From assembly GCA_964035545.1 (NCBI GenBank), contig OZ037765.1, forward strand, positions 18,104,995-18,168,994: a stretch of DNA of 64,000 bases, written 5' to 3'. Below are positions 47,487-51,831 of the stretch, piece by piece. The position numbers were made by a program, and so were the translations under genes. The stretch comes from Bugula neritina. Taxonomy: Eukaryota; Animalia; Bryozoa. The notes below the pieces were generated by a model. It was not told where the DNA came from, did not search any database, and saw only the letters and a list, made by a program, of their open reading frames with translations. Within the stretch, counting starts at the first letter, position 1. Every line of letters starts with the position of its first letter.

Positions 47487-47873
<387 letters not shown>

Positions 47874-48528
47874 CTTAAATTTCAAATAAAATCACTCGAT
47901 CATAACGACCTAATGAGTGTAGTTTATATTACCTACACGAAACAAATTTGTAGTCATCTAAATGAGTAAATAAATTTATTATATCCAATATGGTATAAAT
48001 ACCATATATGTGTGTATTTTTTATTTTATACAAACCTAACATGTGCACTTTAAACAAGCGAAACGAACTCTTATCAACCTGCCGACATTAAAAAAAAATT
48101 TCGTGTGCAACCATCAAACTTAGAGATTCTATATTTTATATTTCATATACTAGTACAGTAAATAATTAATATTCAAACACCTATAATAACCACTCAATAA
48201 CAACTATATTTCCTATAATTGTGTGTTTACATTGTGTTTCTTTATATATTTACAAATATTTAAAAGCTTATAATAACCTCAAAGTCACCACTATATTTGC
48301 ATTGTGTTTTACGTTGTGTTTCACATCTTGATTTTTTTTATGTAAAAATTTAAATTCAATAATGTGTCCGAGGAGTGCTAAAGAAGCATGAAACTAATAG
48401 TAGCACAATAACATAACATCCACTTAAATTGCTCTTTCTCTCGATAATATAATTGCTCATTATTGTACATATAATAATTTGAGCGCTCTTTTATCTGCTG
48501 TTTAACAAACTCACACTACAGCTAATAT

Positions 48529-48531
<3 letters not shown>

Positions 48532-48571
<40 letters not shown>
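48532..48571. repeat. (TA)n microsatellite at the 3' end of the Penelope-like element
   Basis: About 20 TA units, 30 nt downstream of the element's hammerhead on the minus strand. Confidence 0.97.
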
Positions 48572-48576
<5 letters not shown>

Positions 48577-48600
48577 GAAATAAAATGAGATTTGATTAAT

Positions 48601-48671
48601 ATAATGGCATTTATTACTAGTAGTTTCGTACACAAGAACGATGTGCACTCGTCAGATAAATTAGCCACTAT
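48601..48671 (-). ncRNA. Type I hammerhead ribozyme in the PLE 3' UTR
   Basis: Minus strand: atagtggc-taa-tttat CTGACGA gtgcaca-tcgttct-tgtgtac GAAA ct-act-ag TA^ ataaa-t-gccattat. Full catalytic core, 7-bp stem II, short stem III, bipartite stem I (5+8 bp), GUA cleavage triplet. Confidence 0.9.
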
Positions 48672-48768
48672 GATTGCTTACAACTATAAATAATGTAATG
48701 TGTAAATATACACAGAATAAAGCTAGAAGATCAGAATATAACAAAGAGGTAGCATTGGAAGTAATTGG

Positions 48769-50889
48769 CTATGTTACAGCATTCTTGAGTAAAAATTTAC
48801 TACTATGTCTGCATATGGATAAAAAGTCATTGCGCTTATTGAGGGAAGACAACTGTGGCTTATAAAGAATGAAATATTTTTCCCATGAGCATAGCTGACA
48901 GTTTTTAGTGATGTTGTTGTATGGTTGAGCTTTTCTGAGAATTTTCCAGGATATGGTAAAATCCAGACCTTTGTCTTTTAAGGTCCAGATGTGTTTGCTC
49001 AACTCAGTTTGCAAGCGCTTGGTTGGGTGTCTGAAGGAAGCAAGGTGGTTGTAGTATCTTGCCTTGAATGCAGTGGAGGAAATTCCTACATATGTTTCGA
49101 CAGTATCGTTTGATGGGACGGATACTTTGGCCTGGTACACAATGTTTGGGGTGGTGCATTCTCCTGGAAGCGGGCATGTCTCTACATTTCTACAGTTACA
49201 GCCTGCCTGTGATATAGGGGCGGTGTTGCATTTAGTAACACTTTTGTTGTGAGCAGTGATGGTCTGCTCCAAATTTGGGCAGCAACTGTAGCTGAGTTTG
49301 AGTGTGTTTTTATTAAATATTTTGTGCAGTGGGTGTTTGGTGTGGAATGTATCTTTTGTCAGCTTGAGGAATATGGAGCCGATTTTCGTCTTTACATTGC
49401 GGCTATAAGGTGGATTGTACCAGATGACTCGTCTTTGTCGGATGGGTTTGATGCTTGTATTGGTGTTGTCAGTATAGTCTTTGTATTTGAGTTGGTAATT
49501 ATATCCGCTTTTGGCCAAAGCATCTTGATATTGTGGGATGGCATTGTTGAAAATGGTTTCATTGGTAGATATGTCACAAAGTCTGCGGTTTATAGATTCT
49601 GGTATGTTTTTCAGTATACTGGGGGGATGGTTAGAGTCTTTGTGTACATACAGAGGGATGTTGTTAGGCTTAGAGTATGGTGTATAATGTTTCTTGACCA
49701 GATCTAGGGTGACATCTAAATAGTCAGTTGTCTTAATATTAACATCTATGGTGATCTTTAGACCGTGTGACTGGAATAATATGCAGAGATCTTTTTTCAG
49801 TCTTTCAGCTAGTTGTGGTTTAAGATCTGTTACTCCTAGCCCATCATCTCGATATAGACCAATATTAGCTTTGAACTTATTTGAGATTGTACTTAATAAA
49901 AATAATCCTACCAATTCACATGTTTCAGCACCATCATGTGAGCCCATAGTGACGTCAAACAAATTATCTGATTGTCTTTTACCCCAAAATGAGTTGTCAT
50001 GCACCAATATGGATTTTTTTGTGTGCAATATGATATTCCGTTCGTGGTTGCTGACTGTAGTATGCAAGTTGGCAAAGTCGAGAGCATCTGATAGTAGCTT
50101 TGGCGATATAGATGGATAAAATTCCACAATATCGAACACGATAAAAGAGTGCCTGTTTGTGGTGGTCAAATTGTTAAACCAATGTAAAACTGCAGATGTG
50201 CTTTTCCACTGATTTAGGCCAAGTTTGCTGTTTATCGTTGTATTAATTCTGTCAAGTATTTGTTTACTCACCCTACTTATCTCTGGTTTGGTGGGGTTAA
50301 TGAGGCGGCAGGTGGGGTTAGTTATGTAGTTAGCCTTATGGTCCTTGATAGTAATGAAGGCGGGTTTCTTGGCTGTTATAGTGATTCTGTCATCAAGTTC
50401 CAATTGTTCAGCCATGGCTTTGTCCTCACTAGTGATGTTGGAGACATTGTCATTTGATATTTTCTTATAGGTTTTAGTGATGTTGTTAGTTAAGAGTCTG
50501 TCATACGATTCTTTGTCCATTTTGTAGAAATTGTTGCTTTTATCTGCAGGCACTATTATATTGTCGCTCTTGGTTATTTTATGCTTGATGTCGGAGGATA
50601 GCTTGTCTTGAAAGGTATTGTGGACGTGTCTAAACTTAACAGATCGGATCATGTCAGCTAATCCTTGCTCGAAACTTTGCATAGCTGTGATCTGTGGTGG
50701 GGACTTTTTTGACCTGAATCCATAAGTTTCCTTCATGCTAGATCTAGAGTCAGGATTTAGGAAGAAGAAGGCAGCCCATCTCATTTTGATGACTAAAGAT
50801 TCTGTGTATTGGATCAGTCTCCGTATATACAGTGATTGTGATGGAATCGGTATATTCATAGTTGAATAATCAAATCTTAGTTGTTCCAT
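48769..50889 (-). CDS. PLE polyprotein: reverse transcriptase + C-terminal GIY-YIG endonuclease
   Basis: RT motifs FDIVEFYPSI, VTMGSHDGAETCELVG, LYRDDGL, YLDVTL, YVHKDSNHPP; linker CNCRNVETC (CxCx5C); endonuclease NIVYQAKV...TYVGIS...FKARYYNH with CQLC. No internal stops. Confidence 0.96.
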   Translation of the reverse strand: MEQLRFDYSTMNIPIPSQSLYIRRLIQYTESLVIKMRWAAFFFLNPDSRSSMKETYGFRSKKSPPQITAMQSFEQGLADMIRSVKFRHVHNTFQDKLSSDIKHKITKSDNIIVPADKSNNFYKMDKESYDRLLTNNITKTYKKISNDNVSNITSEDKAMAEQLELDDRITITAKKPAFITIKDHKANYITNPTCRLINPTKPEISRVSKQILDRINTTINSKLGLNQWKSTSAVLHWFNNLTTTNRHSFIVFDIVEFYPSISPKLLSDALDFANLHTTVSNHERNIILHTKKSILVHDNSFWGKRQSDNLFDVTMGSHDGAETCELVGLFLLSTISNKFKANIGLYRDDGLGVTDLKPQLAERLKKDLCILFQSHGLKITIDVNIKTTDYLDVTLDLVKKHYTPYSKPNNIPLYVHKDSNHPPSILKNIPESINRRLCDISTNETIFNNAIPQYQDALAKSGYNYQLKYKDYTDNTNTSIKPIRQRRVIWYNPPYSRNVKTKIGSIFLKLTKDTFHTKHPLHKIFNKNTLKLSYSCCPNLEQTITAHNKSVTKCNTAPISQAGCNCRNVETCPLPGECTTPNIVYQAKVSVPSNDTVETYVGISSTAFKARYYNHLASFRHPTKRLQTELSKHIWTLKDKGLDFTISWKILRKAQPYNNITKNCQLCSWEKYFILYKPQLSSLNKRNDFLSICRHSSKFLLKNAVT

Positions 50890-50993
50890 TTTGCAGTTTA
50901 CAAATAGAGTGCTCTACTTAAAGGAGCGTAAAATAGTAAAATGGGTGTTTATAAAACGTTACTAGAGTGCTCTATAGAAATAAATCTAGAGTC

Positions 50994-51044
50994 GTTGTCC
51001 TGATGATCGTAGCTTGCACTACATAAAACAATATTGTAGTCGAT
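50994..51044 (+). ncRNA. Degenerate hammerhead-like motif
   Basis: gttgtc CTGATGA tcgtag-cttgca-ctacat AAAA caatattg TA gtcgat. Topology is right and stem III is palindromic, but GAAA reads AAAA and stems I/II are imperfect. Confidence 0.5.
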
Positions 51045-51440
51045 AAAATGAATATATATAAGTTTATTTTTATATCCAAAATTGTATCAGTACCAAATAT
51101 AAATACTCTATTTTTCGAAATATTGAGTTCTTTTGATTCATTTTTTAATTATAGAAACTATATATATATATATATATATGAGGGGACAAACCCCGAAACA
51201 GCTGCTGTCCACAGATTGAGGTATTATGCTCTCACTTAATGCTCAGCAATGACATTCAGTGATTGAGCTCTCTCACCATGGTCACAAACTCAAGCTGCTA
51301 GCATTTTGCAAGGCTCGTGACTCCTAGGTGACCCCTAGAGTCACTTGAGCTCTCTGGCTTGAGTTTACACACCTTTTAAATATGCTTTAGTAGAAACATA
51401 AGTTTCTACTATTGCGAAGGTGTGGGCCATGGTACTCTGT

Positions 51441-51495
51441 TCTGTGCTGATGAGGGGACAAACCCCGAAACAGCTGCACAGCTGCTGTCCACAGA
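51441..51495 (+). ncRNA. Type I hammerhead ribozyme (copy with an 8-nt duplication in stem III)
   Basis: tctgtg CTGATGA gggg-acaaa-cccc GAAA cagc-tgcacagct-gctg TC^ cacaga; predicted cleavage after 51489. Confidence 0.9.
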
Positions 51496-51720
51496 TTGAG
51501 GTATTATGCTCTCACTTAATGCTCAGCAATGACATTCAGTGATTGAGCTCTCTCACCATGGTCACAAACTCAAGCTGCTAGCATTTTGCAAGGCTCGTGA
51601 CTCCTAGGTGACCCCTAGAGTCACTTGAGCTCTCTGGCTTGAGTTTACACACCTTTTAAATATGCTTTAGTAGAAACATAAGTTTCTACTATTGCGAAGG
51701 TGTGGGCCATGGTACTCTGT

Positions 51721-51767
51721 TCTGTGCTGATGAGGGGACAAACCCCGAAACAGCTGCTGTCCACAGA
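51721..51767 (+). ncRNA. Type I hammerhead ribozyme
   Basis: tctgtg CTGATGA gggg-acaaa-cccc GAAA cag-ctg-ctg TC^ cacaga; perfect core, 6-bp stem I, 4-bp G-C stem II, GUC triplet, predicted cleavage after 51761. Confidence 0.93.
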
Positions 51768-51770
51768 TTG

Positions 51771-51831
<61 letters not shown>

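What the first reader, a model, noticed from the sequence alone, without database searches (positions are those of the whole stretch)
51178..51776. Retrozyme-like array: 272-nt structured non-coding monomer delimited by hammerhead ribozymes (predicted self-cleaving, circularisable RNA)
Seen: ~2.2 near-identical tandem units, each with a type I hammerhead (CUGAUGA, GGGG/CCCC stem II, GAAA, GUC). Cleavage after 51489 and 51761 would release an exact 272-nt monomer. The monomer has nested helices: ACCATGG(51275)/CCATGGT(51427), AAACTCAAGC(51286)/GCTTGAGTTT(51357), GTGACT..CTAGG/CCTAG..AGTCAC (51317-51344), CACACCTT(51368)/AAGGTGTG(51417), TAGTAGAAAC(51388)/GTTTCTACTA(51402). No credible ORF. Established: metazoan non-LTR retrozymes are short tandem repeats with type I hammerheads that yield circular RNAs. 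Inference: this is a young, possibly undescribed retrozyme family, and a more-than-unit-length insert beginning mid-ribozyme fits rolling-circle reverse transcription of a circular RNA.
Basis: partly seen in the sequence, partly recalled or inferred. Interest (0 to 1): 0.92.

Follow-up and report, generated by a model that had tools for sequence, protein, structure and literature searches.

The report
Hammerhead retrozyme array in TA repeat
This is a 2.2-unit copy of a young, non-coding 272-base mobile element that carries a self-cleaving hammerhead ribozyme (an animal "retrozyme", a known kind), pasted into a (TA)n microsatellite beside a Penelope-like retrotransposon of the type that most likely copies it.

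Summary
Window 51178-51775 (+) is a partial unit, a 280-nt unit, a 272-nt unit and a 14-nt tail. It has two complete type I hammerhead cores and one 5'-truncated core. The extra 8 nt is a duplication in helix III of the middle ribozyme, found only at this locus.

No Rfam hammerhead model reaches its threshold, so the ribozyme call rests on the core and helices, not on a curated score.

Genome-wide the unit is a dispersed, very young family. At least 104 insertions share one exact 3' end, 14 nt past the cleavage site and running into (TA)n. Their 5' ends vary. There is no ORF. Several arrays carry a private variant in every unit, which fits repeated copying of one monomer template.

Intact Hydra-clade-like Penelope elements (about 700 aa, one of them 290 nt away) use the same (TA)n sites.

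One RNA-Seq-labelled run holds the unit at very high depth. Circularity and self-cleavage were not shown.

Verdict: a real animal non-LTR retrozyme, a new member of a known kind, probably mobilised by Penelope-like elements. The scan has already met this same family on other pieces of this genome.

The parts
51159..51179 (.). (TA)n tract on the 5' side of the insert. It is part of the microsatellite target. Bases 51178-51179 could belong either to the tract or to the element.
51180..51209 (+). 5'-truncated first unit, equal to monomer positions ~241/243-272. It holds only the 3' part of a hammerhead: helix II, GAAA, helix III and C17. It has no CUGAU and no 5' strand of helix I, so it is predicted to be inactive.
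51210..51489 (+). Unit A, 280 nt. It is the 272-nt monomer plus an 8-nt tandem duplication (ACAGCTGC, 51470-51485) in helix III of its hammerhead.
51433..51503 (+). Complete hammerhead 2. The 5' strand of helix I is 51441-51446. CUGAUGA is 51447-51453. Helix II GGGG/ACAAA/CCCC is 51454-51466. GAAA is 51467-51470. Helix III is lengthened by the duplication. C17 is at 51489, with predicted cleavage after it. The 3' strand of helix I starts at 51490.
   Evidence: the minimum-energy fold of this stretch is the three-way junction, -22.7 kcal/mol
51490..51761 (+). Unit B, the canonical 272-nt monomer running from cleavage site to cleavage site. It is identical to copies on four other chromosomes.
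51713..51775 (+). Complete hammerhead 3. CUGAUGA is 51727-51733. C17 is at 51761. Helix III is 4 bp with a 3-nt loop. The 3' strand of helix I equals the tail.
51762..51775 (+). 14-nt 3' tail CACAGATTGAGGTA, equal to monomer positions 1-14. This is the fixed 3' end shared by the whole family, and it merges directly into (TA)n.
51774..51831 (.). (TA)n microsatellite on the 3' side, about 29 repeats.
48769..50889 (-). Intact 706-aa ORF of a short Penelope-like element with Hydra-clade features. It is a candidate for the kind of helper that copies the retrozyme.
48572..48655 (-). 3' end of that PLE. It has a minimal type I hammerhead (CUGACGA, 7-bp helix II, GAAAC, palindromic helix III), then a ~44-nt tail, then (TA)n at 48532-48571.
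50999..51160 (+). 162-nt 3' fragment of another hammerhead-bearing element. Its core has decayed (GAAAC has become AAAAC). It ends at the same (TA)n tract in which the retrozyme sits.

Best explanation
The array is one insertion of a non-autonomous, non-coding retroelement of the animal (non-LTR) retrozyme kind.

Proposed cycle:
1. Genomic copies are transcribed.
2. The type I hammerhead cuts after GUC and releases a 272-nt RNA with a 5'-OH and a 2',3'-cyclic phosphate.
3. A host RtcB-type ligase closes that RNA into a highly base-paired circle.
4. The endonuclease of a Hydra-clade-like Penelope element nicks a (TA)n microsatellite.
5. The exposed TA-repeat 3' end pairs with the UAUUAU stretch at monomer positions 13-18, and the element's reverse transcriptase starts cDNA there.
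6. The enzyme runs 5'-ward through the ribozyme and round the template for a variable distance. At this locus it went 2.2 turns.
7. The 5' end is then joined to the target, often by T/TA microhomology.

Shown here:
- the anatomy of the array and an intact catalytic core;
- a strong predicted fold;
- dispersal as more than 100 near-identical copies with one fixed 3' end and variable 5' ends;
- near-exclusive location in (TA)n;
- coexistence and co-location with intact PLEs that have the same target;
- presence in RNA-labelled libraries.

Inferred, not shown:
- self-cleavage;
- circularisation;
- which reverse transcriptase does the copying;
- whether the template is a circle or an uncleaved multimer or read-through RNA.

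The confidence figure of 0.85 covers only 'a real retrozyme-type retroelement that inserts into (TA)n'. I put PLE as the mobiliser at about 0.7 and a circular template at about 0.55.
For: Core and helices:
- All conserved hammerhead positions are present: C3-A9 as CUGAUGA, G10.1-C11.1, G12-A14 as GAA, A15.1-U16.1 and C17.
- All three helices are present and helix I is the open one.
- The sub-threshold Rfam alignments place the core and the three helices in a hammerhead architecture.

Fold: -109.9 kcal/mol, z = -7.7. The circular fold is -103.5 kcal/mol.

Family size and age:
- 759 first-look candidates and 83 scored matches at 93-100% identity on all nine large contigs.
- 104 exact copies of the terminal junction GTCCACAGATTGAGGTA+TATATA, against 0 in the control.
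- 39 exact internal unit junctions.

Insertion anatomy:
- All 22 insertions read in full share the same 3' end. Their 5' ends lie anywhere in the unit, and arrays span 0.2 to 5 units.
- (TA)n tracts of at least 12 nt make up only 0.22% of the window.
- A head-to-head pair of 53-nt copies at L027 matches the known PLE insertion style.

Template clues:
- The 3' end lies 14 nt downstream of the cleavage site, so cDNA was not primed at the end of a cleaved linear monomer.
- Variant 27T>C occurs only three times in 216 Mb, in the three units of one array.
- Variant 114C>T is in both units of another array, and 200C>G is in both units of a third.

Selection on RNA structure:
- Subfamily B differs from this copy by two fully compensatory pairs, 26/50 (C-G to U-A) and 103/142 (G.U to U-A).
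- It also differs by a G-C to G.U change in helix II.

Helper:
- A 706-aa ORF lies 290 nt away. Its features match the Hydra clade, whose members insert in (TA)n and always carry hammerheads (PMC8557442).
- At least 875 candidate PLE ORF matches exist in the genome, many intact at about 700-715 aa.
- 7 of 100 retrozyme ends lie within 3 kb of a scored PLE ORF match, against 0.35 expected.

RNA:
- Run X1 (labelled RNA-Seq, 260 Mb) holds the unit at a summed word depth of 5,800-43,000. Contigs cross both the cleavage site and the permuted ends.
- Run X9, an oligo-dT metatranscriptome, holds it at depth 7-19.
- The assembly's copy number could not give that depth from DNA at about 1x coverage.
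Against: - No Rfam hammerhead model reaches its curated threshold.
- Canonical helix III is weak on its own: 4 bp with a 3-nt loop, -0.5 kcal/mol. The minimum-energy fold of the canonical ribozyme stretch is not the active junction. Cleavage may therefore be slow or need a dimer (-14.1 kcal/mol as a duplex).
- No reads showed ends at the predicted cleavage site. The two raw-read runs held nothing, and contigs cannot show ends.
- Contigs cannot tell circles from tandem transcripts.
- Run X1 is only labelled RNA.
- No sequence similarity was found between the retrozyme and any of the 3-4 PLE tails available, so no specific helper family is identified.
- The 5-unit array on C9 has different single variants in different units, two of them shared with other loci. 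A single monomer circle does not predict that.
- A linear read-through RNA ending in (UA)n would give the same 3' junction.
Confidence: 0.85

Rival explanations
1. Same element and same target, but the template is linear. It would be an uncleaved multimeric or read-through transcript that ends in (UA)n copied from the flanking microsatellite. That tail would pair with nicked (TA)n DNA, in a SINE-like manner. On this reading the hammerhead is not needed to make the template and no circle is involved.
For: - The 3' end lies beyond the cleavage site and is always followed by (TA)n.
- PLEs in this genome likewise keep a 22-57-nt tail after their own hammerhead, so their templates are not cleaved there either.
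- Run X1 has contigs that run from the unit into flanking sequence (table 7).
- The C9 array is heterogeneous from unit to unit.
Against: - Most genomic copies hold 1.4 units or fewer (104 terminal against 39 internal junctions). Multi-unit linear templates should therefore be rare, yet arrays of 2-5 units occur.
- A variant private to one array sits in all three of its units and nowhere else in the genome.
- Published retrozymes accumulate mainly as circles (PMC7229834).
Confidence: 0.3
2. The unit is not an independent element. It is the terminal repeat (pLTR) or solo 3' end of a coding Penelope-like element.
For: - PLE insertions are mostly 5'-truncated 3' ends and carry hammerheads (PMC8557442).
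- Vertebrate retrozymes are related to PLE pLTRs (preprint 10.64898/2026.07.22.740005).
- Only a sample of the 759 candidates was read.
Against: - In every multi-unit copy the sequence upstream of a unit is the end of the same 272-nt unit, up to 5 in a row, with no coding part.
- No open stretch exceeds 49 codons.
- A sensitive BLAST of the monomer against the window PLE and all other loci held finds only retrozyme copies.
- Where PLE ORF ends lie upstream (L012, L022), at L022 a separate PLE-type hammerhead and tail lie between the ORF and the retrozyme, and both retrozyme copies begin directly after (TA)n.
Confidence: 0.05
3. An ordinary minisatellite or satellite spread by DNA-level duplication, with a hammerhead-like motif that is inactive or present by chance.
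For: - Rfam thresholds are not met.
- One locus (L010/L011) is a DNA-level duplicate of insert plus flank, repeated every 590 nt.
Against: - More than 100 dispersed loci on all chromosomes share one exact 3' boundary and have graded 5' truncations. Most are under two units. That is the footprint of reverse transcription.
- There are compensatory changes between subfamilies.
- The unit reaches high depth in an RNA-labelled library.
Confidence: 0.03

Closest known systems
Metazoan non-LTR retrozymes (Cervera and de la Pena 2020, PMC7229834): coral, mussel and axolotl families
   Same: - Type I hammerhead in each repeat.
- Non-coding unit within the 150-450 bp range.
- GC below 50%.
- Tandem copies and a highly self-paired monomer.
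- Abundant in transcriptome data.
- Co-resident PLEs.
   Different: - Here most loci are short, 1.4 units or fewer, and the longest array seen has 5 units. Published families reach tens of units or satellite-like blocks.
- The insertion anatomy is unusually clean: one fixed 3' end 14 nt past the cleavage site, and near-exclusive (TA)n targets. That paper does not mention microsatellite targeting.
- Helix III is 4 bp with a triloop and has a palindromic CAGCUG, which puts it between the invertebrate type and the dimer-dependent amphibian type.
- Circles and cleavage were not tested here.
Hydra-clade Penelope-like elements (Craig et al. 2021, PMC8557442)
   Same: - Insertion into (TA)n.
- A hammerhead close to the 3' end.
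- 5' truncation, tandem arrangement and head-to-head arrangement.
- A short extension at the 5' side of insertions. Here many arrays begin 35-57 nt before the unit boundary, and the paper describes a 30-40-bp 'tail'.
   Different: - The retrozyme has no ORF and is only 272 nt.
- Its hammerhead has longer helices than the minimal PLE type with a palindromic helix III.
- Its post-cleavage tail is 14 nt, against 22-57 nt in the PLEs seen here.
- No sequence similarity to the PLE ends available.
Amphibian satellite 2 and Schistosoma SM-alpha hammerhead repeats
   Same: Short repeated non-coding units with type I hammerheads that are transcribed and self-cleave. A weak helix III that can be completed in a dimer.
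   Different: Those are very high-copy satellites or SINE-like families. This family has a few hundred copies and a strict microsatellite target.
Plant LTR retrozymes (PMC4918200)
   Same: Non-autonomous retroelements whose hammerheads excise an RNA that is circularised and reverse-transcribed by a helper element.
   Different: Plant elements have type III ribozymes, LTRs, PBS/PPT sites, 4-bp target duplications, 600-1000-nt circles and Gypsy helpers. None of these features is present here.

Membership tests
Hammerhead ribozyme, type I | Conserved catalytic core: CUGANGA, GAAA, A15.1-U16.1, H17, G10.1-C11.1 | tested here: met
   CUGAUGA / G...C / GAAA / A...U / C is present at 51447-51489 and at 51727-51761.
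Hammerhead ribozyme, type I | Three helices around the core, with helix I open (5' and 3' ends in helix I) | tested here: met
   - Helix I: 6 bp (UCUGUG/CACAGA), an internal loop, then 4 more pairs.
- Helix II: 4 bp with the loop ACAAA.
- Helix III: 4 bp with a 3-nt loop, or 7 bp in the duplicated copy.
- The Rfam alignment places all three helices.
Hammerhead ribozyme, type I | Score at or above the curated Rfam gathering threshold | tested here: not met
   No hit at gathering thresholds. The best lax hits are RF03152 at 19.1 bits against 56.3 and RF00008 at 14.9 bits against 48.5.
Hammerhead ribozyme, type I | Self-cleavage after H17 | not testable with these tools
   The raw-read runs held no reads of the element, and contigs cannot show RNA ends.
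Animal non-LTR retrozyme | Short (150-450 bp) tandem repeat with a type I hammerhead in each repeat, non-coding, GC below 50% | tested here: met
   The unit is 272 nt with 45.6% GC. The longest ATG-started ORF is 21 codons. Arrays have up to 5 units.
Animal non-LTR retrozyme | Dispersed copies that show retrotransposition | tested here: met
   104 exact 3' junctions, variable 5' truncation, and copies on all nine chromosomes.
Animal non-LTR retrozyme | [quoted passage not shown] | tested here: inconclusive
   Very high depth in run X1, which is only labelled RNA-Seq. Present in a true RNA library, X9. Contigs close the 272-nt cycle, but they cannot separate circles from tandem transcripts.
Animal non-LTR retrozyme | Highly self-paired monomer | tested here: met
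   z = -7.7. Two compensatory pairs separate the subfamilies.
Hydra-clade Penelope-like element (the neighbouring ORF, not the retrozyme) | Short element under 3 kb; single ORF with a C-terminal GIY-YIG domain; CxCx5C linker; DKG motif modified; RW(K) motif; no CCHH; hammerhead present; (TA)n target | tested here: met
   - About 2.6 kb lies between two (TA)n tracts.
- The ORF is 706 aa.
- Motifs read by eye: GCNCRNVETC, PADKS, MRWA, VYQ..YVG, CQLC..E and CRH.
- A hammerhead and (TA)n sit at the 3' end.
- Its homologues carry HTH_animal, DUF8422 and GIY-YIG domains.
- Caveat: Pfam itself sees no RT or endonuclease in this ORF, and no phylogeny was made.
PLE pseudo-LTR (rival filing) | The unit flanks, or is continuous with, a PLE coding region | tested here: not met
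   None of the 22 insertions has a coding part inside it. There is no similarity to the PLE sequences held.

The most novel reading that the evidence does not exclude
The family preserves a direct genomic footprint of target-primed, multi-turn (rolling-circle) reverse transcription of a small circular ribozyme RNA by a (TA)n-specific Penelope-like enzyme. Three observations point this way:
- cDNA always starts inside the unit, at the UAUUAU stretch 14 nt past the cleavage site.
- Arrays are clonal for variants found nowhere else in the genome.
- Among 40 insertions, 5' ends cluster in two places. Twelve lie at whole numbers of turns (monomer positions 4-16, about 2 expected). Fourteen lie 35-57 nt further on (positions 229-252, about 3.5 expected), which recalls the PLE 'tail'.

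If this holds, the small, young family would be a tractable system for showing how PLEs pick and copy retrozyme circles.
Probability: 0.3. Interest if true: 0.6.

Novelty: new member of a known kind. Interest (0 to 1): 0.4.

Why it matters
Retrozymes are the main source of ribozyme-made circular RNAs in animals. Who copies them back into DNA has so far been argued mostly from co-occurrence and from similarity to PLE terminal repeats.

This family is small, very young and strictly tied to (TA)n. Its insertion junctions can therefore be read base by base. They match the target and the insertion style of the Hydra-clade Penelope elements in the same genome.

That gives independent, anatomical support for the PLE-helper idea. 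It also defines a priming site that can be tested at the bench.

The host appears to be a bryozoan, probably Bugula neritina. I found no published hammerhead or retrozyme report for it. For genome annotation, the family explains a recurrent class of ribozyme hits next to TA microsatellites.

Tried and rejected
Searches that led nowhere:
- Rfam at gathering thresholds and at E up to 10 over 1 kb found no hammerhead. Only an 81-nt search gave sub-threshold hits.
- A Pfam GIY-YIG search of the genome gave one non-PLE hit.
- An RVT_1 search was swamped by LINE and LTR elements.
- Strict hammerhead patterns found few other families.
- The regions around two of those hits held no PLE ORF.

How the PLE ORFs were found: by reading open frames in the flanks of retrozyme copies.

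Negative checks on the PLE ORF: Pfam and PDB sequence searches found nothing.

Read data: the raw-read RNA runs X19 and X20, from another organism label, held no reads.

Ideas considered and dropped:
- That the PLE and the retrozyme in the window arose head-to-head in one integration event. A 162-nt fragment of a third element lies between them, and the same fragment sits upstream of the retrozyme copy at L028. Serial insertion into one TA tract explains the layout.
- That the 8-nt duplication marks a transmissible subfamily. It is unique to this locus.

Tests without enough power: depletion of variants in the ribozyme among young copies.

Limits reached:
- All 12 own-genome searches are spent.

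Full report
WHAT IS THERE

Window 51178-51775 (+) consists of four pieces:
- a 30-32-nt partial unit (monomer positions ~241-272);
- a 280-nt unit (51210-51489);
- a 272-nt unit (51490-51761);
- a 14-nt tail, CACAGATTGAGGTA (51762-51775).

(TA)n lies on both sides, at 51159-51179 and at 51774-51831.

The two full units are identical except for an 8-nt tandem duplication (ACAGCTGC) in the middle ribozyme. This explains why Tandem Repeats Finder gives period 280 at 100% identity. The duplication occurs once in the 216-Mb genome, so it is a private change at this locus.

The monomer folds at -109.9 kcal/mol, z = -7.7. The circular fold is -103.5 kcal/mol. No reading frame of a multimer is open for more than 49 codons, and GC is 45.6%.

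THE RIBOZYME

Two complete motifs are present, with CUGAUGA at 51447 and at 51727. Each carries:
- the whole hammerhead core;
- a G10.1-C11.1 closing pair;
- a 4-bp helix II with the loop ACAAA;
- GAAA;
- helix III, then U16.1 and C17;
- a helix I of 6 bp that continues after an internal loop.

The first motif is cut off within CUGAUGA, so it cannot be active.

Rfam does not recognise the motif at curated thresholds. On an 81-nt stretch the two best families are both hammerheads: RF03152 at 19.1 bits and RF00008 at 14.9 bits. Core and helices align correctly but score far below the cut-offs. I therefore call it a hammerhead on its features, not on a database score.

Canonical helix III is marginal on its own (-0.5 kcal/mol), and the minimum-energy fold of the canonical stretch is not the active junction. 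Two copies could pair through the CAGCUG palindrome at -14.1 kcal/mol. The private duplication turns helix III into a 7-bp stem at -6.9 kcal/mol, and with it the three-way junction becomes the minimum-energy fold. Dimer-dependent hammerheads with a weak helix III are known from amphibian retrozymes (PMC7229834).

THE FAMILY

A search of the window's own genome gave 759 first-look candidates and 83 scored matches at 93-100% identity on all nine large contigs. Several copies are 100% identical to unit B. Old, decayed copies at 76-91% identity also exist.

I read 22 insertions in full:
- Every one ends at the same base, ...GUC|CACAGATTGAGGTA, followed by (TA)n.
- Their 5' ends lie anywhere in the unit.
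- Array length runs from 0.2 to 5 units.
- Seventeen also have TA repeats directly on the 5' side.
- 5' junctions commonly start with T, TA or AT, which suggests microhomology with the target.

Exact pattern counts over the whole genome:
- 104 terminal junctions, against 0 in the control;
- 39 internal unit junctions;
- 158 occurrences of the tail's first 15 nt in any context.

Among the first 100 of those 158, only about three ends do not continue into TA-rich sequence. (TA)n tracts of at least 12 nt cover 0.22% of the window, so the target preference is extreme.

One locus, L027, holds a head-to-head pair of 53-nt copies. One locus, L010/L011, is a DNA-level duplicate of insert plus flank.

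WHAT THE JUNCTIONS SAY ABOUT THE TEMPLATE

The fixed 3' end is 14 nt beyond the cleavage site. The cDNA therefore did not start at the end of a cleaved linear monomer. The template was either a circle primed internally or an uncleaved or read-through RNA.

In the monomer the tail continues GGTA-TTATGC. At the ends of insertions it continues GGTA-TATATA. A nicked TA-repeat end pairing with the UAUUAU stretch would give exactly this junction. That step is inferred.

Arrays tend to be clonal:
- 27T>C occurs three times in the genome, and those are the three units of one array.
- 114C>T is in both units of another array and at one other place.
- 200C>G is in both units of a third array.

An error made by the reverse transcriptase in one turn would not recur in the next. 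These variants must therefore have been in the template, or the arrays grew later by local duplication.

Against a simple single-circle model, the five units of the C9 array carry different single variants, two of them seen at other loci. That array also starts with a 21-nt duplicated piece that looks like a template jump.

I compiled 40 insertions. Twelve begin at monomer positions 4-16, that is after whole numbers of turns, where about 2 would be expected. Fourteen begin at positions 229-252, that is 35-57 nt further on, where about 3.5 would be expected. The windows were chosen after seeing the data, and the sample is the best-scoring subset, so this is a lead. The second cluster recalls the 30-40-bp 'tail' described for PLE insertions (PMC8557442).

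THE LIKELY HELPER

An intact 706-aa ORF lies 290 nt upstream on the other strand (48769-50889). It sits inside a ~2.6-kb element bounded by (TA)n. The element has its own minimal hammerhead (CUGACGA...GAAAC, palindromic helix III) about 44 nt from its 3' end.

Pfam and PDB sequence searches see nothing in the ORF. By eye it shows the marks that Craig et al. give for the Hydra clade:
- a CxCx5C linker;
- a modified DKG motif (DKS);
- an RW motif;
- GIY-YIG-like VYQ...YVG;
- CxxC and CxH around the conserved E and N;
- no CCHH.

It has more than 2,700 homologues of about 700 aa that carry HTH_animal, DUF8422 and, in some, GIY-YIG domains.

The genome holds at least 875 candidate matches to such ORFs, in several families 47-100% identical to the query. 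Many are intact. That paper states that almost all Hydra families insert into (TA)n and that canonical hammerheads are universal in the clade.

Seven of 100 retrozyme ends lie within 3 kb of one of the 113 scored PLE ORF matches. Random placement gives 0.35, with a maximum of 3 in 2,000 trials. This shows shared target tracts, not co-mobilisation as such.

I found no sequence similarity between the retrozyme and the PLE ends I could read, so the specific helper family is open. Between the window's PLE and the retrozyme lies a 162-nt fragment of a third hammerhead element. The local layout is therefore best read as serial insertion into one TA tract.

RNA

Eighteen public runs from six studies hold the unit. 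I laid four runs on a permuted monomer (L010:1365-1636, cleavage site at 1500|1501):
- Run X1 (labelled RNA-Seq, random, 260 Mb) covers it at a summed word depth of 5,800-43,000. This is roughly 1-3% of the run's bases by my arithmetic. A few hundred genomic copies could not produce that depth from DNA at about 1x coverage.
- Run X9 (an oligo-dT metatranscriptome) covers it at depth 7-19. One contig crosses the cleavage site and another closes the 272-nt cycle.
- The two raw-read runs belong to another organism label and held nothing.

No RNA ends could be seen, and circles cannot be told from tandem transcripts.

The dominant variant in X1 and X9 equals a rarer subfamily present in this genome (unit 2 of L030). 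It differs from the window's unit by two fully compensatory pairs in the predicted fold, 26/50 (C-G to U-A) and 103/142 (G.U to U-A). It also has a G-C to G.U change in helix II, and the catalytic core is untouched. That argues for selection on the RNA structure in the propagating lineage.

HOST AND LITERATURE

The assembly size (216.0 Mb, nine large contigs) matches the published Bugula neritina assembly (PMC11480708). The closest named relatives of a host kinase exon and of the PLE ORF are from the bryozoan Watersipora. No paper in the library holds both 'hammerhead' and 'Bugula'.

What is already published:
- Animal retrozymes and their circles (PMC7229834).
- The proposal that PLEs mobilise them (PMC7229834).
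- For vertebrates, support from the relatedness of retrozymes to PLE terminal repeats (preprint 10.64898/2026.07.22.740005).

Earlier notes of this scan describe the same 272-nt family on other pieces of this genome and reach the same reading. I treated them as leads and re-derived the points above.

VERDICT

This is a real, young animal retrozyme: a new member of a known kind. What is worth keeping from this case:
- the base-level insertion anatomy;
- the strict (TA)n target shared with Hydra-clade-like PLEs;
- the clonal arrays;
- the locus-private duplication that stabilises helix III.

Self-cleavage, circularity and the identity of the helper remain to be shown.

Noticed in passing
window 48532-50998 (-): An apparently intact short Penelope-like element with Hydra-clade features. 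It has a 706-aa ORF, its own minimal hammerhead near the 3' end and (TA)n at both ends. Pfam does not detect its RT or endonuclease.
   Followed up: partly
window 50999-51160 (+); also L012:3063-3221, L028:1808-2072, L074:1242-1400: A 162-nt module with a decayed hammerhead. It recurs at 92.6% identity just upstream of PLE ORFs at two of the three other loci, even though those ORFs belong to a different family, and antisense to them. It may be a recurrent inverted partner or a shared 5' part of PLE insertions.
   Followed up: partly
window ~47911-48010 (+): Another 3' fragment of the same second hammerhead family. Its core has mutated to CUAAUGA. It is followed by a ~50-nt tail.
   Followed up: no
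window 47490-47880: A (GT)n/(AC)n microsatellite of about 390 bp next to the cluster of hammerhead elements.
   Followed up: no
L001 (G000:C9:3146065-3147432, minus strand): The longest array seen, with 5 units. Its 5' end has a 21-nt piece (monomer 6-26) joined back to position 4. This looks like a template jump close to the ribozyme cleavage site.
   Followed up: partly
L027:1291-1418: A head-to-head pair of 53-nt retrozyme 3' ends. Their tails are slightly shorter and end ...GATTGC. This is the twin, inverted arrangement typical of PLE insertions.
   Followed up: no
L030:1781-2099 and runs X1, X9: A diverged subfamily, about 6% different. It is rare in this assembly but dominant in two public RNA-labelled runs. 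This may reflect a sibling lineage of the host. One array (L030) joins it seamlessly to a unit of the young subfamily.
   Followed up: partly
L010/L011 (G000:C8:2722281-2723296): The same 1.5-unit insert plus its TA flank occurs twice, 590 nt apart. This is a DNA-level duplication of an insertion, not two separate events.
   Followed up: no
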